Below are positions 1 through 58,996 of a DNA stretch of 64,000 bases, in pieces; position 1 is the first letter of the stretch; every line of letters starts with the position of its first letter. Both the position numbers and the translations under genes were made by a program. The notes below the pieces were generated by a model. The model saw only the letters and a list, made by a program, of their open reading frames with translations. It ran no database searches and had not been told where the DNA came from. The stretch is from the sequence record MW749003.1; one strand, written 5' to 3'.

Positions 1-2
1 AA

Positions 3-3000
3 ATGTATGATTATTCTACTAGAAACCTAAGTTTTATTAAGATCTGGAAGTTTCTAAAAGATCAAGGTATAAAAAATAATAAATTCTTTTTAAAATTAAA
101 TGATGAAACATTACAGGGTGTTGATCCATATGATCCAAATTTAACTGATGAACAAAAGGTAAGAATACAGGTTGAAGTAATGACTAACTTTTGGTATTTC
201 TTAAGGGAAGTAGTAAGAATTCCTGAATCGGGCGGTTCTATTCATTTCATGTTACACAGAGCCAATCTTGGTCAAATGTTTCTTATGGAAAATAATATTG
301 ATATGATTGAAATATTACCTCGTCAGAATGGAAAAACTATCGGTGCAGTATGTCGTTATATATGGGTATATCATTGGGCTACCAAAAATACTCATATGAT
401 TTTTAGTAATAAACAATACGCCGATTCTCAATTAAATATTAAACGTTTTAATGATATAACTGAATTATTACCTAGTTATTTAAAGACTCATTTAGACCCT
501 AAAAAAGATACAAATAACTTAGCACAAATTTCATGTGCAAAAAACAATAATAAAATTGATGCAATGAGTACTGCTAGGACTGTTACTGACGCTGACAAAC
601 TGGGTTAACTAACTATGGCTCAGTATAAACTCCTTTAATTTCTGGAACGTCCTTCCAAGGATAATCAGAAGCTAAGACTTTTAAAAGTAAAGTTCAACGA
701 CTATCGAAACCGACTTATTAGATCGTTGTGATAACGCTAGATAAGGATAAGGGAGTAGAGTAGAATACAAGCTATAGGTATTCAAAAAGGGGAGCACCGT
801 ATTTAGGTGAAGATATAGTCTCATCTCTATGGTAACATAGAGCAGTTCATAAGAGAACGGTATAGGCGTAGCGAACCTATATGAAGGTAACTTGCGTGGT
901 TGTACAGTACCAATTATATGGTTAAATTTTTAGCCCATTATAATAGTGATATTATAATGAATCCTTCTTAACTGCTGGAACATCCTTTTAGGACAATCAG
1001 CATCCAAGCATTGTTATATAAATAACAATGAAGGTTCAACGACTATCGAAACCGACTTATCAGATCGTTGTGATAATGCTAGATAAGGATAAGGGAGTAG
1101 AGTACAACTCAAGCGATTGGAGTTGGAAATGGAAGGCATCTCAATGAGATGAAGATATAGTCTCATCTTCATGGTAACATGGAGCAGTTCATAAGAGAAC
1201 GGTATAGGCGTAGCGAATCTATATGAAGATAAATGATGATGAATTTGCATTTTTAAAATATAATGATACGGTATACGCTAAACTGGTGCAAACTGGCGTA
1301 TTAAAACTCTCTTAACTGCTGGAAACTCCTAAAGTCTTTAGTACCAAAGTGTAATAATCTAAAGGATATATGGACAATCAGCATCCAAGCATTGTTATAA
1401 ATAACAATGAAGGTTCAACGACTATCGAAAAATATAATTTGTATTATATTGAGTAGAGTACTTTCAAGCGAAAGGAAAAGGAGAGCATGATGAAGGTATT
1501 AAATACTGGAGTGAAGATATAGTCTCATCTCTATGGAAACATAGAGCAGTTCATAAGAGAACGCATTAGACGTAGCGAATCTAATGGAAGGTAATTATGA
1601 GTGCTGCACCAGCACTATCAAAAGCATCAGAAGCCGCACAGCGTAATGGTACTCCTTACGGAAAATTAATTACAACAACTCCTAAACTATTGGGCAATAC
1701 ATTAGTAATAATGTAATTGAATCTTCCTTAACTGCTGGAAACTCCTATATGGACAATCAGCATCCAAGCATTGTTGTTTATAACAATGAAGGTTCAACGA
1801 CTATCGAAACCACTCTAACAGATCGTTGTGATAACGCTAGTTAGAAGGAAGGGAGTAGAGTACAGCCTAAGTGATTGAGGTTGGAAAAGGGAAGCATCTC
1901 AATGAGATGAAGATATAGTCTCATCTTCATGGCAACATGAAGCAGTTCATAAGAGAACGCATTAGATGTAGCGAATCTAATGGAAGATAAATGAATGATC
2001 TTGATACAGAAATGGGTAAATATTGTAAGGGTATGATTGATGATGCATGTCCATTTGATGAAGCTTGGTATGATTGGGATATTGATGAAATTAAAAAATA
2101 TATTGAACAGAACTCTCGAAATGACTTTGTTTATTTAGTATTTAATTATAAAGAGTTAGGACATGATGACAAATGGTATCAAAAACAATGTCGTCAGCTC
2201 AATAATGATTTATTAAAAATTAAACGTGAAATATTATTGGAATGGACATTGGCTAACGATACTTCACCTTTTTCAGAGGAACAATTAGCAGAAATTGGAC
2301 AACATGCAGGTGAACCTATTGGTAAGTTTTATGTAATGAAAAGATATAAATTTGAAATTTTCAGTGAAATGCGAAATATATTTAAAAAATCATGGCTAAT
2401 CGGTATAGATATTGGGGCAGGTTTGAATCGAGATTTTACAGTGATATCTATTATTGATCCTAAAGATATGGTTCAAAAAGCAGTATTTAGAAGTAATAAT
2501 ATATCTTTGCCCGATTTAAAAGATTTGGTTATACACCTAGTATTAGAATTTTGTCCTAATGGTGTCATTATTCCAGAACGAAATAACTTAGGTATCTCTT
2601 TAATACAAGATCTACTACGTTCAGAAGTAGCTAATAACTTATATTATGAAGTTAGAGAAGTAAAGGGAGAAAAGAAAGTTGATGACCCAAAAAGATCATC
2701 TAAAAAGACAGTTAAGACTAAAACAAGAGTTTATGGGGTTACTACTAGTAAAGATAGTCGGGATATAATGATCAATGAGATTCTTAGTAATGCAGTTAAT
2801 GATACTCCACATGTGTTTACAAGTAAATATATTTTTGAAGAATTAAGAACATTAGAAAGAAATAAGAAAGGAAAGATTGAACATAGGGATGGAGGTCATG
2901 ATGATACATTATTCTCATGGCTAGTGGCATGCTATGCTTTCTTATATGGAAATAATATAAATAAATTTGTTAAAGTCATCAGTGATGGCGATAATAATGA

Positions 3001-3290: not shown

Positions 3291-4085
3291 TTGACACATA
3301 TAGGAGGAAGTCTAATGGCTGAAATGATGGATGAACAAGAAGCAAAATTTTTAACAGATGAAGATATTGATCATGTAATTACATCTTTATCAGATGATAT
3401 TATTTTTGATAGTTTGAAAGAACAGATTAGCAATGTATTTGTACAATCTGATAGTAATCCAGTATACTATATTACTTATTTTACTGGTAAATATAATTAT
3501 ATTATGAATAAATATTCAGAGTATGAAGAAGTATGTGAAAAAATAAAAGAAATTAGAGAAGAATTTTATGAAAAACTTAAAACACTAATTGAAGAAAAAT
3601 TTGATTTTACATTAAATTTACCTGCATTCTTTGATGATGAAGAGAAGTTTAATATTATTGGGAACCTTTATGATTTCTTCATAATTAGAAATAAAGTAAA
3701 TTCAGTTAATGTTATCTCTGGATATATTGACAAAGAAATTAAGGATCTTATTAAATACTATAAACCTTTAATTGATAAAAAAGATCTTACCTATAATAAC
3801 ATCAAGAAGACTATTAATAAAGATATTGCAGTAATTATTTGTAAACTACCTGACATTATTTCAAATCTGACTGTGGAATCTGGTTTTGATCTAGTACAGC
3901 TAATGATAGATGATGAACAAGAAATTACGAATATGGTTATTGGTTCTTTATTTGATGAGAATACTGAATATATTAATATTGGAGAAAGCTTTATTGATAA
4001 TATTCTTAATGCTATTAAGAAAAATGAAGTATATTATTTGCAGGCTAGAACTCAATTAGTAAATAAATATTCAGATAAAAAATAA
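3291..4085 (+). CDS. Hypothetical protein, late class (likely start ATG 3315)
   Basis: Long ORF; GGAGG RBS before ATG 3315; late promoter. Confidence 0.8.
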   Translation: MTHIGGSLMAEMMDEQEAKFLTDEDIDHVITSLSDDIIFDSLKEQISNVFVQSDSNPVYYITYFTGKYNYIMNKYSEYEEVCEKIKEIREEFYEKLKTLIEEKFDFTLNLPAFFDDEEKFNIIGNLYDFFIIRNKVNSVNVISGYIDKEIKDLIKYYKPLIDKKDLTYNNIKKTINKDIAVIICKLPDIISNLTVESGFDLVQLMIDDEQEITNMVIGSLFDENTEYINIGESFIDNILNAIKKNEVYYLQARTQLVNKYSDKK

Positions 4086-4105
4086 ATTATTGGAGGACTA
4101 TATAA

Positions 4106-4816
4106 ATGGCAATTATTGATAGTAAAAATAATGATATGATTAAAACAATGAAAGGTCTTCAAGAAAGTTCAGAATCACTATTAAAAACTTTTAAAGATTT
4201 AGGTTTAGATAAAGAAAATAAAGAAGAGTTTGAAGAATTAGAAAAGTCTGCTAATGAAATTAAGCAAGAATTTGATACTATTGCTACGATTGAGGAAGAA
4301 GTTAAGAAATATTCTGGCTGTAGTGCTTTTATTAAACAGCTAGAAGAGGTTCTTGAAGATGATTCACAGAGTGAAGAATTAAAAGAAAAAATTAAGAGAC
4401 AGATTTTTATGATTAAAAGTAGTTATAATTTTAAAGCATTTAGTGAATTACAACCTACTTTAAAGCCTAAAACTTTACTTAATAATTATAAAGCATTACG
4501 AAATAAAGCTGAAAATAAATTAAAGAATAATGATACTTTCACATTTAATACATCCTTTTATTTAGAAAAAATGATTAAAGGAGTATTACCAGATGATTTG
4601 AAATCTTACTCTAGAATGACAGCATCATATATTTATGCTTTTATTAATACTGCTTCTCTTAAACGTGGTGGTTATGCTATCTTTGTTGGATTTTTAATTA
4701 ACAATATTAATAATTTAGATAAAGAGTATCCAGAAAAACAAGAACTTGTAGATAATCTTATTAAATTAACACAACTTTTAAAAGATGAATTGATTAGTAA
4801 TGCTAAATGGAAATGA
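4106..4816 (+). CDS. Hypothetical protein
   Basis: 236-aa ORF with GGAGG RBS, followed by a hairpin at 4830-4866. Confidence 0.8.
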   Translation: MAIIDSKNNDMIKTMKGLQESSESLLKTFKDLGLDKENKEEFEELEKSANEIKQEFDTIATIEEEVKKYSGCSAFIKQLEEVLEDDSQSEELKEKIKRQIFMIKSSYNFKAFSELQPTLKPKTLLNNYKALRNKAENKLKNNDTFTFNTSFYLEKMIKGVLPDDLKSYSRMTASYIYAFINTASLKRGGYAIFVGFLINNINNLDKEYPEKQELVDNLIKLTQLLKDELISNAKWK

Positions 4817-4874
4817 AATAAATAAAATGAGTAAACCTATATATTAAATTATATATAGGTTTACTTATTATTAA

Positions 4875-4886
4875 AACATAATATTG
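4875..4886 (+). promoter_or_regulatory. Late promoter AACA-N6-TG
   Basis: AACA taatat TG upstream of 4917. Confidence 0.6.
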
Positions 4887-4916
4887 AACTACTAAGTCAT
4901 GAAAGGAGTTTAACAA

Positions 4917-5663
4917 TTGAAATATAATTTTTTAAAGAAAGTTGATAATAAAATAATTTTTGATGGTGAATATATGGAAGTTTATATTCCTAAAGACTAT
5001 TTTTCAAAAGGAATTGCTAGTTATCATGGTGATATGGTGAATACATTAGGGGTTTTTAACTTTATGGTTTACACTCAACCAAAAGAATCCAAAAATAAAG
5101 GTGAGATTCATCTATTAAAGCTTCCTATGGAAATAAAGTTTGAATTTACAACATACCATGATATATCTACTAAATTAAGAGCAGACTTAGATAAGGACGA
5201 TTATAGAGTTTTTCAATTGGAAAAAGGCTCTGTATTCATTGATAATGTTATTAAAGAACAATCTGCTGAAAACAGTAAAAAATTTATTTACCTACTTCAT
5301 GGTGGAAAATTACCTAAATCACTAAAGTACAGTGATATAATTGACTTATATCATGAAAGTATCTCTTTAAATAAAGTAAAATTAAATAACCCATCAGTAA
5401 TATTTGAATTAATCATTGCTGAACTATGTCGCTATAGAAATAATACAGAAGTTCCATTTAGAATGATGATTGGTAAAGAGAATGCTAAAGTATCCGACTA
5501 TGACTATAATAATATAGCTCTTAAGAAATTACCTGCTATTAACTCAACATTTAATGCAATGACATTTGAAGATATTAACCAAGCCATTATATCTTCAATT
5601 CGTAAAACTCGTAATAATGAGAATGAAAATCCATCACCTGTAGAAAGAATAATTAAGTACTAA
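4917..5663 (+). CDS. Probable RNAP beta' C-terminal-fragment-like subunit (virion RNAP)
   Basis: C-terminal FELIIAELCR...STFNAMTFEDINQAII...SPVERII parallels SELIIREMMK...SLSRSLLFEQVKKQL...SSILDKLL in the 31421 beta' subunit. Confidence 0.55.
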   Translation: MKYNFLKKVDNKIIFDGEYMEVYIPKDYFSKGIASYHGDMVNTLGVFNFMVYTQPKESKNKGEIHLLKLPMEIKFEFTTYHDISTKLRADLDKDDYRVFQLEKGSVFIDNVIKEQSAENSKKFIYLLHGGKLPKSLKYSDIIDLYHESISLNKVKLNNPSVIFELIIAELCRYRNNTEVPFRMMIGKENAKVSDYDYNNIALKKLPAINSTFNAMTFEDINQAIISSIRKTRNNENENPSPVERIIKY

Positions 5664-22782: not shown

Positions 22783-25700
22783 TTATTCCCTAGTTAGAGA
22801 ATAGATTGCTTGTATTGCTTCATTCCCAATTTGGCGGGAGTTTCGACCCATTTGATCTAACATATTTTTCTTTTCCCATATTAGTCGTTCTGCTTCTTCA
22901 TTAGCTTCTTTACTAAATACTCCACGTAGAGATACTGTATCACCCAAAATCTTCCAGTAGATTCGCTACATCTACTGCGTTCTCTTATGAACTGCTCTAT
23001 ATTACTATAGAGATGAGACTATATCTTCACAATATAATTGTGCCCTCCGTTTCCATTTAAAGAGGAATTATAACCTTATTACGGAATACCTCTACCGCTT
23101 GGCTGTACTCTACTCCCTTCCATCTAACTAGCGTTATCACAGCGATCTGTTAGAGTGGTTTCGATAGTCGTTGAACCTTCATCTTTAAATGAATTAAAGA
23201 CGCTTGGATGCTGATTGTCCATATAGGATTTTCCAGCAGTTAAAAGGGTTTTACTACGACAGTAGATTATTATCTTTTATAGGTAAATACTAAATTACCA
23301 CAATCCCATATTCTTTTAAATCTAGTTTTATCCATGATTTCAAATTCAGTACTATTATCACTATATAATTTTGGAAATTTCTTTTTGAGATTAGACTTTC
23401 TATAATTAAATCTATGGAATCGTTGAGTTTTTTCAACATTAACATACCAATAGTTGGGTTTACTAATATGACTTAATTCAAATTTATTATTGATATAAAC
23501 ATTACCATCTGACCAGCGTCTATCTGCATAGGTTATTAATTCTTTCCACTCATAATTTCTCTCGAAGTATTTGAGAAGTTTACTAAAAGCACCTATTACT
23601 CTATAGTCCATATCGGTAGCGAATCTTGATAGTTCAAAAATATTATCAACACTATTTCTACCTAGACTTTTTCTAAGTTTACTAAAAGTCATAACCGCTA
23701 CAAGTTCATCGCCATCTTCTTTTGGAAGCCATAAGCCTAATTTAATTGATGACAAATCTTTTCCCTGAATGTGATTTCTTTCTAGGAATTCATTTTTAAA
23801 ATTGTTATCAATTACTTCTACATAACAATTTCTAGCGTATATTTTAGTAGAATTATTTAATTTTAGTAAGTGTCTTATTTTTTCTTTTACTATGAGAGGT
23901 TTGTTAACCCATTCGTCTTCAAAAATTTGAATTAGTCTAATCCCTTTACTATTACATTTTTCTAATTTTTCTAAATGATAGTTTCTTTTCTTCCCCATTT
24001 GCTCTGAATGCCAATATAAACCATTAAATTCAAAAGCAATTTTTTTGGAAGGAATAAATATATCAATCTCTTTACCTTCAAGTAATTTCCTGTCATTACA
24101 TATGACTTTATCTACAACTAATCCTTTAATAAAAGAAGATAGTTCTTTTTCCATTTTTGATGAACTTTTAAATGCACAATATGGACATCTATTTCCATTA
24201 TTAAAGTTTTTAATTGTAACTTCATACTCCTTATTACAACTATGATGTAACAACCTAATCTTCGTTTTATTATTACGATATTCACCTAATAATGAATACT
24301 CATTATTTGTAACTAAGCTAATTTTTCTTTTAACCTCATCAGTAGTTAGCCTTCTTTTACCAGAACATTGAGGACATCTATTTTTCAAAGCATAATAAGG
24401 AGTAGTCTTCCATTCATAATTACAGTCATTACATCTGAAAAGTATTTTGGTATCGATATTGATATATTTCTCAAGACTTATAAGTCTTCCATTAGTCTTT
24501 TCTTTTAATTCCTTCTTAAACTCATCATTGCTTTTTAATCTTGATTTACCTTTATTAATATCAGCACACTGAGGACATCTACTACCATTATGAAATATAT
24601 CAGGTCTAACCTCATATATATTTCCACATAGTTCATGCCTTAATTTGATTTTAGTCTTATTGTTAATATATTCATTGGATAAAACTGTATAGGTATTGTT
24701 AGTTAGTAATTTAACTTCTTCTTTGAATTCATCCAGTGTCTTTTTGCGTGGCATACACTAATACCTCCAAATAATTAATAATTATTTGTTTATTTGACAC
24801 TGTATTCCCTTAAAAAGAAATAATATTGAATTTATCGTAGTCCCCGCCTAAAGCCTTTAAATAACCATTATAAGGAATTACTGTATCAACAAAAAGTTCA
24901 TCCTCTGCGGGATAGTCAGGGTATATAACAGGATAATCAGGTAAGTATCTATCTTCCAGCTTTTGAGGTCGTGTTTCTTTTGTTGAGAGAATTCTAATTT
25001 TACTTGGATAAATATTCTATAGTGATAGGTAAAGATTTGATATAATCTCCTCTTTTTCCCCCACTTCACACCCTACGTGCGACTTTCACCGCATAAGGCG
25101 TTCCATCAAAATATATTATTTTGACTATGACCCTTCGCTCCAATGGAGTTACCCATCTTCATAACTACTATGGTCTGCTGACTTTCTATATAAGAGTATC
25201 AACTATAATTTCTCTTATATAGAATCTCTGACGTTCCGTAAATGATAGTATAGCTATAACTTAGATGCCTTCTGCCCTATATAAACTTCTATTGTACCAC
25301 ACTTTACAATCAGGTCGTTCACCAGTACCGTATTACTAAACCCTGAATTTATATAGTATAAAAAGGTTCGTGTTCCTCATCATATTATAGCACCGCCCAC
25401 CCTATCTATTAGTATTATAGCATTACTAATATTCAGATGACTTCACCTAACTTCATACAAATATTTTATATAGTTTAAAATAGATGCATGTAGGAGTATT
25501 AGCGACAAGTCTTCAATGAAAATGGTCATATCTTTTACTTGTTCTCATTTACAGTTTAGATTATAAAATCTACTCCATTTCACATTAAATGCTTATAGGA
25601 GAACGTCACATACGATACTGCTCTATTGGATATCTTGTTACATATACATGTTTATCTTTGGTAATATCAACTGCCGCAATGAATAGAATATCAGTTAATG

Positions 25701-49983: not shown

Positions 49984-50030
49984 AAAATAAAGGATAGAGA
50001 TAATTTAATCTCTATCCTTTATTTTTTTTT
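49984..50030. terminator. Bidirectional terminator
   Basis: AAGGATAGAGAT/ATCTCTATCCTT with A/T tails between convergent genes. Confidence 0.75.
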
Positions 50031-51759
50031 TTGTATACTTAAAAACTAAATTTCCACAATCCCAAATTCTATCATAACCAGCTTCTCTCATAATTTGAAT
50101 TTCTGTTTTATCATTACTATAAATTTCTGGAAATAATTCTTTTAATCTTTGTTTTCTATAGTTGTATCTATGTGAAAGACTCAATTTATTTTTATTAAAA
50201 TACCAATAATTTGGCTGAGAATTATGCATAAAGTGAAAGTTATTTTTATAATATACATTTCCTTCTGACCATCTTAAATCAGCATATGTTATGATGTTAT
50301 TCCAATCATAATTCTTTTTAAAATAACTGAATAATTTTCCAAAACTACCTATTACATTATAGTCTCTTTCTGTAGCAAATCTACTTAATTCATAGTCATA
50401 TTTATTCCCTTTTTGCCCTAAGCTAACTCTAGGTTTACAGAATGTCATTACTGCTACTAACTCATCACCCTCATTCCTTGGATACCATAGTCCCAGTTTA
50501 ATAGTAGAGTTATCAGATCCCTGAATATGATTTTTATCTAAAAATTCTCTTTTCACATTATTCTGAATTTCTTTTATATAACATTTTCTAGCATATATTT
50601 TTTCTCCATTATTTAAACCTAAAATATGTTTTATCTTTCCCTTTATAAGTTCTTTATTATCAATCCACTCATTCTCAAATAAATGAATTAATCTTATACC
50701 TTTTTCATTACATTTTTTCAATTTATTTAGATGGTAGTTTCTACCTTTTCCTTGAGATTCACCATGCCAATATAAACCATTATATTCAATTGCTATTTTC
50801 TTTGAAGGTATATAAATATCCAGTTCTAAACCTTCAAGTATTTTTCTGTCTGATAGAATTACATTAGTGCTATTGGGGAGAATTTGTTTAATATAATCAT
50901 ATAATTCAATCTCATCTTTTGAATTATGTTTCTTTAGTTGACATCTAGGACAATCTCTTTTAACTTTTTTACCTCTTGAATTACCATGTAAAATATCGAC
51001 CGGTCTAACCTTCCAAGAATAGCCACATGAATGCTCAATAACTATTGGAGTTTTATTATTAATATATCTACTCTTAATTGTATAATCATTACTATTAAAT
51101 ATTCTATAAAAATCTTCTTTAAAACCATTAGATCCTTTATTTTTTGGATTTTTATTACATATATTACACCTTTTTCTTTTTAGGAAATTAGTTGGTGTAA
51201 TAAAGAAATTATGAGAATCACTAGTATTGTGTCTCATCTCAATTTTATCTTGAGAGCTAATATATTCTCCTAATACAGTATATTCATCTCCTACTAAATC
51301 ATACACTTCTTTAATAAACATTTCAGTAGTCTTTGTCTTTTTCCTTTTTATTAGTTTCTTAGTACAATCAGGACATCTTGAACCCTTACTGAGAAAGTCA
51401 TTAGGTCTTTTTTTAAATTCCTTATTACAGATGTTATGTCTAAGTAATACTAGTTCAGAACTATTAATATATTCTCCTAATACAGTATATTCATCCCCTA
51501 CTAATTCATACACTTCTTTAATAAACATTTCAGTAGTCTTATTTTTTCTTTTAGATATTCTTTCTGATTTATGTAAAGGACATCTATTACCTGCATTTAA
51601 AAAGCCATTTGGTGTGACATAGTATTCATGACTGCATTTTTCATGTTTCATTTTTATTTTATTATTAGTTCCAGTATATTCTCCTAATACAGTATATTCA
51701 TCCCCTACTAATTCATACACTTCTTTAATAAACATTTCAGTAGTCTTCTTTTTAGGCAA
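50005..51759 (-). CDS. Free-standing homing-endonuclease-like protein: Zn-finger array + Vsr/EDxHD-like nuclease + Mom-like GNAT (likely TTG start 51759)
   Basis: Paralog of 23270-24754 (ELDIYIPSKKIAIEYNGLYWH; ELSRFAT...ITYADLRWSEGNVY). It lies outside any intron, after the beta gene stop. The start was chosen by the AAAGGA RBS and similarity to MPRKKT. Confidence 0.8.
   Translation of the reverse strand: MPKKKTTEMFIKEVYELVGDEYTVLGEYTGTNNKIKMKHEKCSHEYYVTPNGFLNAGNRCPLHKSERISKRKNKTTEMFIKEVYELVGDEYTVLGEYINSSELVLLRHNICNKEFKKRPNDFLSKGSRCPDCTKKLIKRKKTKTTEMFIKEVYDLVGDEYTVLGEYISSQDKIEMRHNTSDSHNFFITPTNFLKRKRCNICNKNPKNKGSNGFKEDFYRIFNSNDYTIKSRYINNKTPIVIEHSCGYSWKVRPVDILHGNSRGKKVKRDCPRCQLKKHNSKDEIELYDYIKQILPNSTNVILSDRKILEGLELDIYIPSKKIAIEYNGLYWHGESQGKGRNYHLNKLKKCNEKGIRLIHLFENEWIDNKELIKGKIKHILGLNNGEKIYARKCYIKEIQNNVKREFLDKNHIQGSDNSTIKLGLWYPRNEGDELVAVMTFCKPRVSLGQKGNKYDYELSRFATERDYNVIGSFGKLFSYFKKNYDWNNIITYADLRWSEGNVYYKNNFHFMHNSQPNYWYFNKNKLSLSHRYNYRKQRLKELFPEIYSNDKTEIQIMREAGYDRIWDCGNLVFKYTKKKIKDRD
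51261..51747. repeat. Three 73-bp near-identical direct repeats, 207-bp period (51261, 51468, 51675)
   Basis: Each encodes KTTEMFIKEVY(E/D)LVGDEYTVLGEY. Two copies are identical; the third differs at 2 positions. Confidence 0.9.
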
Positions 51760-51780
51760 AACAATCATCCTTTTATATAA

Positions 51781-51820
51781 ATTGGATTTCAACTATTATT
51801 TTGTTTAGTTGAAATCCAAT
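51781..51820 (-). promoter_or_regulatory. Late promoter AACA-N6-TA forming the loop of a perfect 15-bp inverted repeat
   Basis: Arms ATTGGATTTCAACTA and TAGTTGAAATCCAAT; the loop 51796-51805 is AACAAAATAA on the minus strand. Confidence 0.65.
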
Positions 51821-51838: not shown

Positions 51839-54800
51839 TTATTCTGAATATATTTTACCAATTTCTCGTTTAAGATGTACTAATGCTTTGTTTAAATATA
51901 GAGCATTATAAATATCAACGGTCATGCGTGAAACAATACTCAATGGACTCATAATAGCTTCAATATTCTCATCTGGATCATTCTCACTAAAAGGCTCTTG
52001 ATCTTTAGGAATAACATCAGATACAATTGTTTTAAGTGCTGTATAATACGTAATCTTATCTCCAATACCAAGTTCATCATCATACTCAATATAAATCTCA
52101 ATGAGTAGTCCGTCTACTTCAGTACCTTTAATTTTCTCACCTGATTGCTTTTGAATAGGTTTAAGATTAACAGAAGTCAGATCATTAGTAACAGACTTAA
52201 TCTTATCTTCTTTCTTCTTACTATCTTTAATATAGTTCTTCAGAATCTTTTGTACTGAAGGAGAAAACTCACTGATATCTTTATTGTAGTACATTACAAC
52301 ATCTACAATCTTACCAGTATATTTAGAACTTACTTTGTTCTTAGATAACTCATTAATAGTCTCATTAAAGTCATCTCCTAGTTTATCTAAGAGTTGGTTG
52401 AGTGATTTATCTTCAAAGGAGTTTTCAAAGATAATCAATGGATCACCAGTCTTAACCATATCGCCTTTCTTAACAATAAAGTCAATGTTTGAGTTAACTC
52501 CAAGAGCAAGTTCTTTCTTCATAGTAATTTTAGTAGATAGGTCTTGAGATAAGCTTTCTGTAATAATACTACTATCTTCATAAGTGTAATCTGCGCTTGC
52601 TAGTGCTACTTTACAAAGCTTCCCTGTAGTATACGTGATATCATCTTTCTTATCGCCAAGGAAGTAACTTGGATTCTTCGCTAGGATATCATCTTTTTTG
52701 AATTTCTCTCCTACTTTGATAATGAGTTCTTTACGATTAGCAATGTAAACAATTATCTTCCACCAAATTCGCTAGTTTTGGTGCGCCCTCTAACGGACTG
52801 CTCCATGTTACCATGAAGTTGAGACTATATCTTCAAAGTTCCCTGTTTCCCAGTATACATAAATAAAAGTATACCAGATTTCATCTCAGAAACCTGCCAC
52901 CAATCGCTTGTGGGGTACTCTACTCATCTTTATTAATAAGATTTTCGATAGTCGTTGAACGTTCTCTATTAGTTTAATAGAGCTTCGCTTCTGATTATCC
53001 TTTTAATAAGGACTTCCCAGAAATTAAAGGAATTTAACGTGAGCCTTTAAACCCACCATTACTATTCTTACTCATATGCTCGGAGAGATCAATGACGTCT
53101 TTCTTACCATCATTATAACGAACGACAGCTAGCTCATGTTCTTCATCTATGGACTCTAGAACTCCATCTTTTTTTGCTCTAAACACAAAGTCGTCACTTA
53201 GAATATAAGCAACAGTCTTCTCTACACCACTACCAAATAGAGGTTTAGATTGCTTTGTGGTAGGAATGATCGTTAACTTCCATTAGATTCGCTACGTCTA
53301 ATGCGTTCTCTTATGAACTGCTCTATATTTCTATAGAGACGAGACTATATCACTATCCTTAATAATTAAGGATAACTCCCATTTCCATTTAAGGGATTCT
53401 CACCCACTCCAAACACTTGAGCCGTACTCCTATTGCGGAATTTCACCGCTACTCACAATCCTAAGATTGCTTTCGGATAGTCGTTGAACTTTATTCAAAA
53501 GTTTTCTTTAAGTATTCTTCTAGATTACTTAACTGTGTATAATTGAATCTGAATAGTTTATAACCCTTTCTTTTACAATACTCATTTTTTAGATTATCAC
53601 GGAATTGTATATCCTCTAAGCCTTCTTCTCCACCAAAAAAATCAGATGGCTTAAAATGTTGCTTACCATCATATTCAACTAATATTTTAGTTCCGTCCTC
53701 ATCTTCAAAATAGAAATCAAATCGTAATCTTCTTCCTGTTTTTGGATTAACTAAGTCTGAAAATGATTTTTCAATTTCAAAGTAGATATTATTCTGGTTG
53801 AAATAATTAGTAATAATTTGAATCCCACTAGAATTTCTTCCAATTCCATTACTACAATGAGGACATCTGTACCCTAAAATAAAGTTATTTGGCTTTATCT
53901 TAAAAGTTTTTTCACATTTTCCATGATATAATGTAACATGTTTGTGAGCATGGGTATATTCATTTGTTAGAGAATATTCATTACCAACCAATTCATAAAG
54001 TTTTTCTTTAAATGTCTCTGTAGTTCTTTTTTTAGTTTTAGCACAATTTGGACAACGATAACCAGAAAGAAAATTTACAGGTAATACAGAATATTCATTA
54101 CCGCATTTGTTATGTCTCATCTTAACGTGAGTCATATTGTTTATATATTCAGAAGTAGGTTTATATTCATTACCGACCAATTCTTCAACTTTTTTTCTAA
54201 AATCAGAATCGGTTCTTTTTTTATTTTTAGCACAATTTGGACAACGATCTCCTCGTCTGATAAACTGATATGGTTGAACCTTATATTCATTACCACATTT
54301 ATTATGTCTAAATAAAATTTTAGTATGCTGTGCTAAAAATCTTCCTAATACCACATATTCATCACCAGTTAATTCTTTTACTTTCTTTACAACTTCCATA
54401 TGTTTTTTATTCAATAAACAAATTGGACATTTAGTTACTTTATTTTTCTTAAAGAAACTATCTGGTCTCATTTCAAATGTACTATCGCATACTTTATGAT
54501 AAAATATAGCATTTATAGTTGATGATATATATTCTCTAACTTCAAATTCATTATTATATACATCTTTTAATCTTCTAGAATAAACTTTACTTAACATATT
54601 ACACCCTCCGACAAACAGTTGTAATAATATGTTAAATTATTTAAAAACTATTTTGAATATTAGCTGCTGATTCTCCAATTCTATTAGTTTTCAAACCTTC
54701 ACGCTTATTATTTCTAATTACGTTGTGGTCTAATAGACTCTAAGGAATTTCCAGCAATTAGAGAGTTTATCTAATAGTATTACTACTATTAGGCACGAAT

Positions 54801-57800
54801 CATGCTTTTGTTGGGTACTCTGCATGCCTACTCGTGGAGGATCAGCATGCCTTACTGTAAAGGAGTTCAATAATTCTGCTGGACCATAGATATTTGTCGT
54901 GTTATTTTTTGTATTAGGATTGGTGTCTAAGAATCCTCGTGTGTTTTTAAATGCTGGATCAAAAGTTAACTGTCTAACCCATTATCTTCATATAGGTTCG
55001 CTACACCTATACCGTTCTCTTATGAACTGCTCCATGTTACCATGAAGATGAGACTATATCTTTATCTAGTCAAAAAAAAAGAAAGGAGATGACTAGATAT
55101 CTCCCATTTCCATTTAAGGGATTCTCACCCACTCCAATCGCTTGAGCCGTACTCCTATTGTGTGTTAACCACTAAAGGATAGTCGTTGAACGTTACTCTC
55201 GTTATAATTAAAAATAATTTATAAAATTATTATTTTATTTTTTCCATAATAGTAGCTCTCCTTTTTAACTTACTACTATTATAATATATTTAACGAGAGT
55301 CTTCGATACGGATTGTCCTATTATTAGGAGTTTCCCGTAGTTAGAGAGATTTTATCATTATATATCACTATATAAGGGGGCAGTTTAATTCACCCCAACT
55401 TTCATTATCTTCCACTAGATTCGCTACATCTAATGCGTTCTCTTATGAACTGCTCTATGTTTCCATAGAGATGAGACTATATCATCATCCTATTAGGATG
55501 CCTCCCATTTCCAACTCCAATCGCTTGAGTTGTACTCTACTCCCTTCCACTAACTAGCGTTATCACAACGATTTGTTAGAGTGGTTTCGATAGTCGTTGA
55601 ACCTTACTCTAATGAGTCTTGGATGCTGATTGTCCTTAAAGGATTTTCCAGCAGTTAAAGAGGTTTACTTATAATATTTCTATTATAAGGGACTATTATA
55701 AATCTTGTCTGGAAATTCAAGAATTATAATAATTCAATCCGAGTCGGGCGTTGACATTGCCATGATTCCACGCATACTAGGGTCATAAGCTCGAATATCA
55801 GTTGTATAAGCATCCGTTTTCCTTCATATAGGTTCGCTACACCTATACCGTTCCTTAGAACTGCTCTAAGTTTCCTTAGAGACGAGACTATATCATCACT
55901 TAAAAAGTGCCTCCCATTTCCAGCCTCAATTGCTTAGGCTGTACTCTACTCCCTTCCTACTAACTAGCGTTATCACAACGATCTGTTAAAGTGGTTTCGA
56001 TAGTCGTTGAACCTTTACCTTATTACAAATAATTTGTAACTTAGGTACTTGGTTGCTTATGATTACCCAATCCTTTAAATTTTTACCATACCTGAATTGT
56101 TATATTCAGCCATCTATTATGTTTCCATATAGATTTGGTATTAAAGGCTCTAAGGGTTTTCCAGCAGTTAAAGAGGTTTTAATTGGACTAAAACACTTTA
56201 ATCCAAGTTCCTTCCTGAAAGCCCCTTGTAAGTAGCCGCACCACCCTTTTCAATTTCCAAAGAAGGGTTAAGGACACTATATTCATCGACAGTAGGTGAA
56301 TTCATTAATGTCTTTAATAGAATATCCTGTGGAACAGACATCTTAATAGGATTACCAGCTTTCAGTGTATCCTTATACGTTTTAAATGAATCTGCCAAGA
56401 TTTTATATAGATAAGCATTTACTTGCTCAGTACCACGGATTCGATATGAATTCATATCATTCAGTGGACTATAGCTCATATCTTCCAATAAGGTATTCGC
56501 ATACAACAATATGTCATAGATATTCTCAGGTAATTCTAACTGTTTCAGCACATCTAATGTGATAGGATCAACCATTAGAGATAGAGTATTGTGAAGACCT
56601 TTACCCATATTTCTACTACCGAACATCTCATAGAAAGTCTCAATATAAGGATCTTTAGAGTTCATTTCTTCAAATGCATACTCTTCAGTAGCCATAGTAC
56701 TTAGACCACTTAATAATAGGGAATTTCTCAATAAAGAATTATTATAATATAGGTATCCATCTTTAAAACGGATCTTATCATAGTCATCATCAATTGTAAT
56801 TCTCTTATTTTTAGTATCAAAGCTATATTCAATATTATATCTTTCTAATAAATCTTCTAATCCTAATTCATATCCAAGAAGAACCACTAGAGGGATCATT
56901 CTATTATTAATACGAACTCGGTTATATGCTAGAGACTTAGAATTACTTAAAGAAGATAATTTTTTATAAGCTTCCTCACTAAGTGAAGTGACAACAACTT
57001 TAATAATGAGTTCTGAAAGACTCATATCAGTATTTTCTTGTTTCTTATTATTAATCAGATAAACTCTTTTACTTGAACGATTAAGAGCAATAACGTTTTC
57101 ATTATCTTTTGTATGACCGATTGGTAAGAATTGTTTATCATCAATATTAATCTTAGCAAGCTTAGCCATATTATCAAGATCACTTTTCAATAAATCTTCT
57201 ACTTCTTTTTGACTGAACATAAGTTTATATTCATCATTCTCTAAGCTTAGAAGGAAAGAAGAAATCTCATTATATTCAAGAGTTGTTTCATAACCCTCAT
57301 TAATTGTTAGAGCGTTACCTAGGCGATAATTAAACTTCTTACCTGATACCTTAAATTCATTTAAATCCATACCAAAGAGTTTCTTAAGTTTCTCAGTTTT
57401 ATGAGATAATTTAGAACCAAAGCGCATGACAAAAAACTTATTGTAGTTAGTAGTAATCTGAACTTCATCAGGTTTTGTTTTTACAATGGGCAAAGATAGA
57501 ATTTGCTTAAGAATTAATTTTTTACCACCATTAATATTCATAAACCTACCATCTCTGATAATAGGATAATCAAATTTAACAGTATGCTTTACATTACGAT
57601 CATCTTGGAAAGTAACAGTATAAGTTAATTTTTTTGATAAATCAGTAGATGTGTCTTCTGTTTTAATATCACTTACAAATAATTTAACATCGCTATCTCC
57701 ATTAAATGATGAAAGAACTGCAACTAAGTCTTTTTTCATCTGTTTTTCAAAGTAGCTCATATCAAAATCTTTGAGATTTGAATATCTAGTTTCTTCTTGA

Positions 57801-58996
57801 ATAACATTTGTATTGGTAATTGGCTTTCGGTCAATACTTGTTGATTTAAAGTCATCAATAATATCTTGAATATTAATATCATCAAGAGTAACTTGTTTTT
57901 GTTTTTCTTTTAGACGTTCAAGAGTCTTTCTCTGTTTAATTTCATCTCCACCAGTAGACTGAAGCTCTTTAAGAGTTGAAATATCGGCTTTTAATTCTTT
58001 ACTGTTATTTAAAATATCAATGATTTCATCTTCACTTTTATCAAGAATATCTTCATCACTTGAATCAATAGCTTTTTCAATATCATCACCAATCTTATCA
58101 GTAACTTCAATTGCACTACTAGATAGTTTTGTATTTCCATCGATTTGGAAATTACTTAATAATTTTTCTTTAACTCTTTCAGATTTTTCTTTTACTAATG
58201 CATCTCTCTTGTTTTCTGTTTCTTGAGTTGCCTCTTCTTTACCTAAAGGTTTTTCATCATTATTAGTCCTCTGATGGTTTGCTGTTTTAATGAGAACATT
58301 TAATGCATTAAGGAATCTATTTGCAAGAAGATTAGAAAGTTCATCATTAATATTGAATTTAATAAATGTATTATTAACTGTAGTATAAAAAATAAAGTCT
58401 ACATTCTTAAGCTCTTTCTTCTGTTCCTCTGTTAACAACTTTCTTTTAATTGCCATATAGATATAAGCAAAAGGTGTTCTTGCATTATTTAAGTCAAAGA
58501 ATGATGGATCAAGAACATTGTCAGGAACAGGAATTGCTACTGCTTTATTCTCATATGATGCGCCCTCTTTAATTTTAGATATAAGAAAATCAAAGTACAT
58601 TTCAACTCGTTTTCTTCCACGAACTTTAATTTCTACTTCATTCTCAAGATGCTCGTTTGTAATATCATAGATCAAGTTAAGATCATTATAATTAGTTAAG
58701 GCACGTTTAGTATAAATAATACTAGAACATTTTGCTTTTACCTCATCATAATATTTCTTTTGATCTACAATAATTCTTTTATTCTTCTGAATGGTATTGA
58801 ATGCTCTTGGAATATATACTCCTCTAAAAAAAGAAGGACTGAATATATTAGAATTAATAAAATCAAATATCTCACTTTGATTATTTCCTGAAAAGAAAAT
58901 CAAATTTGAATTACGGTCATTTTTCCTTTTTTTAATGGATGAAAGTTTTATATTAGAGTACACTCTCAATTCCTTGAGATTATCAAGATAAAACAA
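51839..58996 (-). CDS. Multisubunit RNAP beta subunit, probably virion RNAP, spliced: complement(join(51839..52749,53051..53270,54802..54979,55392..55402,55737..55814,56201..58996)), 1397 aa
   Basis: The spliced frame (4194 nt) reads GLSGRNLD|DAYTTDIRAYDPSMRG...STPDSD|KVGV|VRQLTFD...GMQSTQQKH|IIPT...SNGG|FYIANR...GDKITYYTALKTIVS...PLSIVSRM, giving beta conserved regions in order. Late promoter at 59022-59033. Confidence 0.92.
52750..53050 (-). mobile_element. Group I intron beta-I5 (301 nt, ORF-less)
   Basis: P1 GGGU/GCUC; P4 variant UUCUG/CAGAA as in terL-I1; R and S elements; terminal G at 52750. Confidence 0.9.
53271..54801 (-). mobile_element. Group I intron beta-I4 (1531 nt) with a homing endonuclease gene in the P6 region
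   Basis: P1 GCAU/GUGC. The ORF lies between the Q element (CAGCAG) and the R element (UUCAACGACUA). Terminal G at 53271. Confidence 0.92.
53491..54597 (-). CDS. Intron-encoded homing endonuclease: four Zn-finger repeats + Vsr/EDxHD-like nuclease, no GNAT domain
   Basis: HxxC...RCPxC repeats; LRFDFY...VEYDGKQH; own late promoter at 54622-54633. Confidence 0.82.
   Translation of the reverse strand: MLSKVYSRRLKDVYNNEFEVREYISSTINAIFYHKVCDSTFEMRPDSFFKKNKVTKCPICLLNKKHMEVVKKVKELTGDEYVVLGRFLAQHTKILFRHNKCGNEYKVQPYQFIRRGDRCPNCAKNKKRTDSDFRKKVEELVGNEYKPTSEYINNMTHVKMRHNKCGNEYSVLPVNFLSGYRCPNCAKTKKRTTETFKEKLYELVGNEYSLTNEYTHAHKHVTLYHGKCEKTFKIKPNNFILGYRCPHCSNGIGRNSSGIQIITNYFNQNNIYFEIEKSFSDLVNPKTGRRLRFDFYFEDEDGTKILVEYDGKQHFKPSDFFGGEEGLEDIQFRDNLKNEYCKRKGYKLFRFNYTQLSNLEEYLKKTFE
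54980..55391 (-). mobile_element. Group I intron beta-I3 (412 nt) with a vestigial endonuclease expression cassette
   Basis: P1 GGGGU/GCCCC; P4 variant UACGG/CCGUA; R and S elements; terminal G at 54980. Confidence 0.9.
55403..55736 (-). mobile_element. Group I intron beta-I2 (334 nt, ORF-less)
   Basis: P1 GGAU/GUCC; P4, R and S elements; terminal G at 55403. Confidence 0.9.
55815..56200 (-). mobile_element. Group I intron beta-I1 (386 nt, ORF-less)
   Basis: P1 UUGGAU/GUCCAA; P4, R and S elements; terminal G at 55815. Confidence 0.92.

What the first reader, a model, noticed from the sequence alone, without database searches (positions are those of the whole stretch)
55392..55402. An 11-nucleotide exon between two group I ribozymes in the RNAP beta gene
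Seen in sequence: AAAGTTGGGGT (K-V-G-V) lies between the terminal G of beta-I2 and the start of beta-I3. Its last five bases form P1 of the downstream intron (GGGGU/GCCCC). Its first bases are all that is available as 3' exon for the upstream intron. Established: this is the conserved TP(D/E)xxxxG region of beta. Inference: two ribozyme cores must share 11 nt, which probably forces an ordered pathway; skipping it would frameshift the polymerase.
Basis: partly seen in the sequence, partly recalled or inferred. Interest (0 to 1): 0.8.

Follow-up and report, generated by a model that had tools for sequence, protein, structure and literature searches.

The report
11-base exon between two self-splicing introns
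A Bacillus giant phage's virion RNA polymerase gene really does carry an 11-base exon between two self-splicing introns, but the same exon is already part of the published gene model of its sister phage AR9, so it is a confirmed curiosity and not a discovery.

Summary
The window is Bacillus jumbo phage vB_BspM_Internexus, a relative of PBS1 and AR9. [quoted passage not shown] It is split by five group I introns. Intron I2 (55736-55403, Rfam 104 bits) ends in G55403. The exon AAAGUUGGGGU (55402-55392) follows. Intron I3 (55391-54980, 74 bits) starts at the next base.

Joining the six exons gives one open 4194-nt reading frame, 1386/1398 identical to AR9 gp189. Intronless relatives read DSD-KVGV-VRQ without a break. 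Leaving the exon out gives D-G-stop at codon 960.

The proposed P1 of I3 (GGGGU with GCCCC, U·G at the splice site) is the minimum-energy fold and fits the rule seen in all five introns. I2 shows no P10 pairing with the exon, so the two ribozymes do not compete for bases. A forced splicing order is not supported.

The AR9 GenBank product already reads STPDSDKVGVVR, so the exon sits inside its 6-piece join. Shorter exons between group I introns are known, down to 1 nt in placozoan cox1.

New here: relatives use four different insertion sites within 14 nt, and I3 in this phage has lost its homing-endonuclease gene.

The parts
56201..58996 (-). Exon 1 of the virion RNAP beta N-terminal subunit gene (aa 1-932). 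Ends ...GGAAGGAACTTGGAT.
   Evidence: tblastn of AR9 gp189 gives 99% identity over aa 1-932. Goe21 lacks intron I1 and reads straight through ...TTGGAT|GATGCT....
55815..56200 (-). Group I intron I1, 386 nt. P1 is UUGGAU with GUCCAA.
   Evidence: Rfam RF00028, 70.2 bits. Boundaries come from the intronless Goe21 and L005 alleles.
55737..55814 (-). Exon 2, 78 nt, encoding DAYTTDIRAYDPSMRGIMAMSTPDSD. Its last four bases, GGAU (55740-55737), are the 5' strand of P1 of I2.
55403..55736 (-). Group I intron I2, 334 nt, no ORF. The internal guide GUCC (55693-55690) lies directly 5' of P2. The terminal G is 55403.
   Evidence: Rfam 104.4 bits over the full-length model. 97% identical to the AR9 intron. 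Goe21 and L005 lack it and read GAT AAG without a break.
55392..55402 (-). Exon 3, the 11-nt micro-exon AAAGUUGGGGU, coding K, V, G and the first two bases of V. Bases 7-11 are the 5' strand of P1 of I3.
   Evidence: Identical in AR9 and PBS1. Present in the deposited AR9 gp189 product.
54980..55391 (-). Group I intron I3, 412 nt. The guide GCCCC is 55381-55377. P10 is possible between GGUU of exon 4 and AACU (55385-55382). It is the AR9 intron with the g190 HNH-AP2 gene deleted; the ribosome-binding site and first codons remain.
   Evidence: Rfam 74.4 bits. blastn against AR9 I3: nt 1-164 and 166-412 match AR9 nt 1-167 and 806-1053 at 98%.
54802..54979 (-). Exon 4, 178 nt. Starts GGUUAGACAG and encodes (V)VRQLTFDPAF...QQKH.
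53271..54801 (-). Group I intron I4, 1531 nt. It carries a 368-aa ORF (53491-54597) with DUF4379 treble-clef and CapR-like domains, a probable homing endonuclease.
   Evidence: The 3' half matches Rfam at 45.4 bits, below the 50-bit gathering score. Pfam hits. This endonuclease class is described for AR9/PBS1 introns in PMC12350094.
53051..53270 (-). Exon 5, 220 nt.
52750..53050 (-). Group I intron I5, 301 nt. P1 is GUGGGU with GCUCAC.
   Evidence: Rfam 76.3 bits. Boundaries were chosen so that the product reads GGFYIANRKE, as in uninterrupted homologs.
51839..52749 (-). Exon 6, 911 nt including the stop codon. Contains RNA_pol_Rpb2_6.

Best explanation
Two related but independent group I introns (I2 and I3) sit 11 bp apart in the most conserved stretch of the phage's virion RNA polymerase beta gene, the TPDSDKVGVV motif that matches bacterial ETPEGPNIGLI. 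They probably arrived by endonuclease-driven homing.

Each ribozyme uses its own internal guide. I2 pairs GGAU at the end of exon 2 with GUCC and releases its 3' end at G55403. I3 pairs GGGGU, the last five bases of the micro-exon, with GCCCC, and aligns exon 4 through a short P10 (GGUU with AACU).

The micro-exon is therefore kept in the mRNA, joined on both sides, and supplies K-V-G-V. I2 makes no detectable pairing with the micro-exon, so the ribozymes do not compete for bases and either can splice first. I infer that the usual order is 5' to 3' as the RNA is made.

Shown: the anatomy, the frame, the homology, the P1 pairing and the conservation among relatives. Inferred: self-splicing activity, splicing order and mode of arrival.
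For: - Both flanking introns match the full-length Rfam group I model, at 104 and 74 bits.
- The spliced CDS is one 4194-nt ORF, 1386/1398 identical to AR9 gp189.
- The intronless allele L005 reads GAT AAG GTT GGG GTG GTA without a break.
- Goe21 lacks I1 and I2 and, after removal of its own intron, also gives DKVGVVR.
- 29 uninterrupted homologs keep K/V/G/V at these positions.
- P1 of I3 is the MFE structure.
- In all five introns of the gene the guide complements its own 5' exon with U·G at the splice site. Over these five introns plus two further guide/exon pairs (the I3-site intron of L006 and the first terminase intron), the mean is 5.6 contiguous pairs for cognate guide/exon pairs against 2.9 for non-cognate pairs.
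- The serine codon before I2 is TCG where the intron is present, which makes the G-C pairs of P1. It is TCA or AGT where the intron is absent.
- The AR9 intron at the I3 site, and unrelated introns at the same site in L006 and L007, carry HNH-AP2 endonuclease genes.
- gp189 is reported as a virion protein of AR9 (PMC5312081).
Against: - No RNA data were examined here, so splicing and the mature junctions are inferred.
- P1 of I2 has only 4 exon base pairs and is not in the MFE fold, which prefers a long hairpin inside the P1 loop.
- Guide/exon specificity among the paralogous introns is modest, because several exons end in similar GGNU sequences.
- Two folded cores held 6 nt apart may clash sterically, which could impose an order I cannot see from sequence.
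Confidence: 0.9

Rival explanations
1. Obligatorily ordered or coupled splicing. Because the two cores are only 11 nt apart, they cannot both be docked at once. One intron must leave before the other can act, and this may set the rate of late polymerase production.
For: Only 6 nt separate the terminal G of I2 from the P1 helix of I3. The last 60 nt of I2 and I3 are 83% identical, so mis-pairing of splice sites is conceivable. [quoted passage not shown]
Against: No base is needed by both ribozymes. I2 has no P10 with the exon, and its P1 lies in exon 2. Either order leaves a valid substrate. The placozoan 1-nt exon shows both half-spliced intermediates.
Confidence: 0.2
2. I2, the exon and I3 form one composite tandem intron (twintron-like) that is removed as a unit, so the 11 nt are a pseudo-exon absent from the mRNA.
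For: Tandem group I modules that splice as one unit are described in fungal mitochondria, for example the cox3-640 intron (PMC12308204).
Against: Removing the 11 nt gives D-G-stop at codon 960 and loses about 440 residues, including Rpb2 domain 6. KVGV is conserved in every uninterrupted homolog. Each module has its own guide, U·G pair and terminal G.
Confidence: 0.02
3. The exon is 12 nt. Both I3 boundaries lie one base further 3' (GGGGUG|AAUU...AAUGG|GUUAG), which gives the same mRNA.
For: The mature sequence is identical under either choice, so protein homology cannot decide.
Against: The 5' exon would end in G, not in the U that pairs with the guide G. In the MFE fold U55392 pairs with G55381. 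I2 and I3 share the terminus GAAGATAATG.
Confidence: 0.04

Closest known systems
Bacillus phage AR9 g189 (KU878088, protein AMS01273.1; Lavysh et al. 2016, Virology 495:185)
   Same: Same gene, 99% identical product. The same I2, 11-nt exon and I3 arrangement, with an identical exon sequence. The CDS is deposited as a join of 6 pieces, and its product reads STPDSDKVGVVR. PBS1 has the arrangement too.
   Different: In AR9, I3 carries the HNH-AP2 gene g190, which has its own early promoter (PMC5312081). Here that gene is deleted. Here I4 carries a CapR-like endonuclease ORF that AR9's I4 lacks. I could not read the AR9 paper, so I do not know whether it discusses the micro-exon in the text.
Placozoan mitochondrial cox1 micro-exon (Osigus et al. 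2017, PMC5436844)
   Same: A very short exon flanked by two independent group I introns. It is needed to restore a conserved codon and is explained by a second intron inserting next to a resident one.
   Different: 1 nt against 11 nt, mitochondrial against phage, group IB introns. RNA-seq intermediates were observed there and none were examined here.
Staphylococcus phage Twort orf142, a gene with three group I introns (Landthaler & Shub 1999, PNAS 96:7005)
   Same: A phage gene with several closely spaced, related group I introns, with exon skipping reported in the title (reference lists). The I2 core shows blastn similarity to introns of Staphylococcus myophages.
   Different: The paper is not held in the library, so its exon lengths could not be compared. 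The host gene is different.
PhiPA3 gp210 intron in the vRNAP gene gp211/209 (Birkholz et al. 2024, PMC11620839)
   Same: A group I intron with an HNH nicking homing endonuclease, inserted at conserved residues of a jumbo-phage virion RNAP gene.
   Different: A single intron, a different subunit site, and a demonstrated role in phage competition. No micro-exon.
Ophiostoma cob-201/219 tandem group IB introns separated by 18 nt (PMC12308204)
   Same: Two group I modules separated by a very short sequence that can be read as an exon.
   Different: There the 18 nt may be a duplicated pseudo-exon and the reading is ambiguous. Here the 11 nt are unique and required.

Membership tests
Group I self-splicing intron (Rfam RF00028), for I2 and I3 | Full-length match to the covariance model above the gathering score (50 bits) | tested here: met
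   I2 104.4 bits and I3 74.4 bits, both over model positions 1-253.
Group I self-splicing intron (Rfam RF00028), for I2 and I3 | The 5' exon ends in U, which pairs with a G of an internal guide sequence (P1) | tested here: met
   I3: U55392·G55381 plus four G-C pairs, present in the MFE fold. I2: U55737·G55693 plus A-U and two G-C pairs, assigned by position directly 5' of P2 as in I3 and I4, but absent from the MFE fold.
Group I self-splicing intron (Rfam RF00028), for I2 and I3 | The intron ends in a G (omega-G) | tested here: met
   G55403 and G54980. Both lie in the shared terminus GAAGATAATG.
Group I self-splicing intron (Rfam RF00028), for I2 and I3 | Catalytic self-splicing with guanosine as cofactor | not testable with these tools
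   Needs in vitro transcription and splicing, or cDNA.
Micro-exon flanked by two independent group I introns (placozoan cox1 type) | A complete intron core on each side, and the exon bases restore conserved codons | tested here: met
Micro-exon flanked by two independent group I introns (placozoan cox1 type) | Half-spliced intermediates and a mature mRNA that contains the exon | not tested
The AR9 RNA-seq of PMC5312081 could be re-mapped.
Tandem composite intron (twintron) spliced as one unit | The sequence between the modules is absent from the mature RNA | tested here: not met
   Removing it gives a stop at codon 960 and loses conserved KVGV. This is indirect evidence from coding only.
Virion RNAP beta N-terminal subunit of PBS1-like jumbo phages (AR9 gp189 orthologs) | Collinear high identity to gp189 and homology to bacterial RNAP beta | tested here: met
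   1386/1398 identical. A profile of 29 homologs matches bacterial beta chains at E 2e-30. Pfam RNA_pol_Rpb2_6 is present.

The most novel reading that the evidence does not exclude
The 11-nt spacing makes docking of the two ribozyme cores mutually exclusive. Splicing would then be kinetically coupled, and a measurable share of transcripts would skip the exon, using the 5' splice site of I2 and the near-identical 3' end of I3. The result is a beta fragment truncated at TPDSDG-stop. The intron pair would then act as a built-in throttle or quality gate on late production of the virion polymerase, not as a passive pair of parasites.
Probability: 0.08. Interest if true: 0.55.

Novelty: already known. 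Interest (0 to 1): 0.28.

Why it matters
In this phage's own GenBank record the gene is split into separate fragments with no join, and one spurious ORF is called inside intron I1. The exon map given here corrects that.

The locus is also a compact natural test case. Two related, ORF-less, presumably self-splicing ribozymes lie 11 nt apart in about 950 nt of RNA. That is suitable for asking how neighbouring group I cores fold and choose splice sites, and how often exon skipping happens.

The comparative result is the part that goes beyond the AR9 gene model. Relatives place introns at four different positions within 14 nt of the same beta motif, and some of those introns carry HNH-AP2 endonuclease genes. 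This marks the site as a homing hot spot in jumbo-phage polymerase genes, the kind of locus shown in PhiPA3 and PhiKZ to serve in competition between phages (PMC11620839).

Tried and rejected
- I tried to read Lavysh et al. 2016 (AR9 genome) and Landthaler & Shub 1999 (Twort). Neither is held. Whether the micro-exon is discussed in print, and the Twort exon lengths, stay unchecked.
- I looked for a P10 pairing between the micro-exon (AAAGUU) and the bases 5' of the I2 guide. None exists in register or one base off, by reading the sequences.
- The MFE fold of the I2 5' region does not show P1. I kept the GGAU/GUCC assignment on positional analogy and on the TCG/TCA/AGT codon correlation.
- A Pfam scan of gp189 for the Rpb2 fork domain covering the motif found only Rpb2_6. 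The motif equivalence instead rests on a weak sub-alignment (stretch i-E 1.3) within a strong overall profile hit to bacterial beta.
- A scan of IMG/VR for GATAATGAARGTNGGNGT gave 53 loci. Only AR9 itself has an intron tail upstream, and the rest are chance matches. Under this strict pattern, no further instance of the I2/exon arrangement turned up outside the PBS1 group.
- A search for complementarity between the micro-exon and the rest of the precursor found an 8-10 bp match, including G·U pairs, to exon 4 (UUAACUUUUG, 54969-54960). I treat it as probably chance in AT-rich sequence.
- Composite-intron and pseudogene readings were rejected on coding grounds.

Full report
**Identity of the window.** The window matches Bacillus phage vB_BspM_Internexus (MW749003.1) from base 1. 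Bases 1-2400 are 100% identical, and ORF coordinates agree with that record. The phage is a Takahashivirus, close to PBS1 and AR9. The finding lies on the minus strand, in the gene for the N-terminal part of the beta-like subunit of the virion RNA polymerase. This gene is the ortholog of AR9 g189, which GenBank annotates as a CDS joined from six pieces. AR9 gp189 is a late gene product and a virion protein (PMC5312081).

**The observation.** Rfam finds nine group I introns and one group II intron in the window. Rfam finds four group I introns above threshold in this gene and a sub-threshold match for a fifth. Read on the minus strand, the sequence is ...ACGCCCGACTCGGAT | I2 ...GAAGATAATG | AAAGTTGGGGT | GAATTAAACTGCCCCC... 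I3 ...GAAGATAATG | GGTTAGACAG....
- I2 is 55736-55403, and Rfam matches its core at 104.4 bits.
- I3 is 55391-54980, at 74.4 bits.
- Both Rfam matches cover the whole model.

**Is the exon real?** I mapped the exons with tblastn of AR9 gp189 and by reading the junctions. The map is E1 58996-56201, E2 55814-55737, E3 55402-55392, E4 54979-54802, E5 53270-53051 and E6 52749-51839. Joined, they give one open frame of 4194 nt. Its product is 1386/1398 identical to AR9 gp189 and aligns without gaps across ...MSTPDSDKVGVVRQLTFDP.... Three independent intronless references agree:
- A near-identical metagenomic phage contig (L005, ERZ777002) reads GAT AAG GTT GGG GTG GTA AGG without a break.
- Goe21 lacks I1 and I2 and reads ...GATAGTGATAAGGT before an intron of its own.
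- More distant full-length homologs of 1367-1430 aa all carry the motif.

Among 29 uninterrupted homologs the four positions are K 17, V 21, G 27 and V/I 25. A profile built from them matches bacterial RNAP beta chains (best E 2e-30). One weak sub-alignment (i-E 1.3) pairs tpdsdkvGvvrqLs with ETPEGPNIGLIGSLS. Without the exon, the message reads GAT GGT TAG, a stop at codon 960.

**RNA anatomy.** The fold of 55440-55340 gives, as the minimum-energy and centroid structure, a 3'-tail hairpin of I2. It is followed by an unpaired GAAGAUAAUG-AAAGUU. Next comes a helix GGGGUG/UGCCCC in which U55392 pairs with G55381, and then P2 of I3.

The same rule holds for all five introns: the guide lies just 5' of P2 or P3 and complements that intron's own 5' exon with U·G at the splice site. 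The pairings are I1 UUGGAU/GUCCAA, I2 GGAU/GUCC, I3 GGGGU/GCCCC, I4 GCAU/GUGC and I5 GUGGGU/GCUCAC. Over these five introns plus two further guide/exon pairs (the I3-site intron of L006 and the first terminase intron), cognate pairs average 5.6 contiguous base pairs and non-cognate pairs 2.9, which is a modest separation.

P1 of I2 is short and absent from the MFE fold, which prefers a long hairpin within the P1 loop. It is supported by a codon correlation. The serine codon before the site is TCG where I2 is present, and TCA or AGT where it is absent.

P10 is plausible for I3 (GGUU of exon 4 with AACU) and for I5. I found none for I1, I2 or I4. So I2 makes no visible base-pairing use of the micro-exon.

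**Consequence for mechanism.** The two ribozymes do not claim the same bases. I2 needs exon 2 and its own terminal G. I3 needs exon bases 7-11. If I2 goes first, I3 sees a normal 5' exon. If I3 goes first, I2 sees a normal 3' exon. Nothing in the sequence forces an order.

I infer a 5'-to-3' co-transcriptional preference, because I2 is complete about 400 nt before the core of I3. The 6-nt linker may well prevent both cores from being docked at the same moment, but that is a steric argument I cannot test. The placozoan cox1 precedent argues against obligate order: a 1-nt exon between two group IB introns showed both half-spliced intermediates (PMC5436844). The last 60 nt of I2 and I3 are 83% identical, so exon skipping is a realistic side reaction. 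Its product would be truncated.

**Origin.** The five introns of the gene are 70-79% identical to one another. Their cores resemble introns of many phages.

Relatives place introns at four positions within 14 nt of this motif:
- After TPEG in L008, 3 nt upstream of the I2 site.
- The I2 site itself.
- After AAGGT in Goe21 and L009, 5 nt downstream of the I2 site.
- The I3 site, 11 nt downstream, in AR9, PBS1, L006 and L007.

The I3-site introns of AR9, L006 and L007 carry HNH-AP2 endonuclease genes. The L006 and L007 introns use a different, longer guide (GCUCCAAC) against the same exon. In this phage, I3 is the AR9 intron with the endonuclease gene cleanly deleted; the ribosome-binding site and first codons remain. 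The picture is repeated, independent homing into a motif too conserved to change. It matches the general account of intron homing and the PhiPA3 vRNAP case (PMC12908238; PMC11620839).

**What is known.** The deposited AR9 gp189 sequence (AMS01273.1, found as P0081) reads STPDSDKVGVVRQ. AR9 has the identical I2, exon and I3 arrangement, so its 6-piece join must include the 11-nt exon. The feature is therefore already in the public record for the sister phage. I could not read the AR9 paper to see whether it is discussed. Shorter exons between group I introns are documented in mitochondria. A pattern scan of IMG/VR found the arrangement only in AR9.

**Verdict.** The structural reading is supported. 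The claim of forced order is not supported. The feature is already known through AR9. Interest is low to moderate. The insertion hot spot and the corrected exon map for this phage are the useful additions.

Noticed in passing
window 1-2400 (+): The terminase large subunit gene is split by four group I introns (Rfam 596-842, 914-1184, 1266-1546, 1673-1942). By my reading two exons are very short, about 28 nt (895-922) and 37 nt (1236-1272), and together they encode ...RGCTVPIIWYDEFAFLKYNDT.... Short exons between related introns recur in this genome. AR9 and PBS1 share the arrangement.
   Followed up: partly
window 52750-53050 (-); AR9 protein P0081 around residue 1095: The deposited AR9 gp189 reads NSNGGFVYIANRKE. 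Uninterrupted homologs read NSNGGF[Y/F]... with no extra V; for example, P0030 has NSNGGFYIANRKE. Boundaries that obey the group I rule (5' exon ending in U, intron ending in G) give GGFYIANRKE. The AR9 join at the fifth intron therefore looks misplaced by 3 nt.
   Followed up: partly
L003 (Goe21) 4002-5358, L008 5822 onward, L009 3492 onward, L006 6761 onward, L007 4143 onward: Relatives carry introns at four different insertion points within 14 nt of the TPDSDKVGV coding sequence (-3, 0, +5 and +11 relative to the I2 site). This is a dense homing hot spot. Goe21's exon downstream of its intron is heavily recoded at synonymous sites (TGGCGTAGTCCGGCAACTCACA).
   Followed up: partly
window 55150-55300 (-), inside I3: I3 keeps the ribosome-binding site and the first codons (MEKIK-stop) of the HNH-AP2 endonuclease gene g190, which AR9 carries at this place. 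About 640 nt have been deleted. The flanks are 98% identical to AR9.
   Followed up: yes
window 53491-54597 (-) and 50005-51792 (-): Intron I4 carries a 368-aa ORF with DUF4379 treble-clef and CapR-like domains. A free-standing 595-aa ORF just downstream of the gene has the same domains. Both fit the CapR-like/Vsr-like homing endonuclease class described for AR9 and PBS1 introns in PMC12350094. AR9's I4 has no such ORF.
   Followed up: partly
window 25019-25559 (-) and 22995-23306 (-): Rfam finds a group II intron (D1-D4 80.5 bits, D5/D6 55.1 bits) and a nearby group I intron. This is probably the virion RNAP beta-prime N-terminal subunit gene reported for AR9/PBS1 in PMC12350094.
   Followed up: no
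window 56053-56235 (+): The GenBank record of this phage calls a 60-aa 'hypothetical protein' (INTERNEXUS_69) here. The ORF lies on the strand opposite intron I1 and is most likely spurious. The record also lists the exons as separate 'putative RNA polymerase beta subunit' genes with no join.
   Followed up: no
window 55396-55404 and 54960-54969 (-): The end of I2 plus the first bases of the micro-exon (UGAAAGUUGG) can pair with UUAACUUUUG in exon 4 (10 bp, 4 of them G·U; the core is AAAGUU with AACUUU). This could bring the two ends of I3 together, but it may be chance in AT-rich sequence.
   Followed up: no
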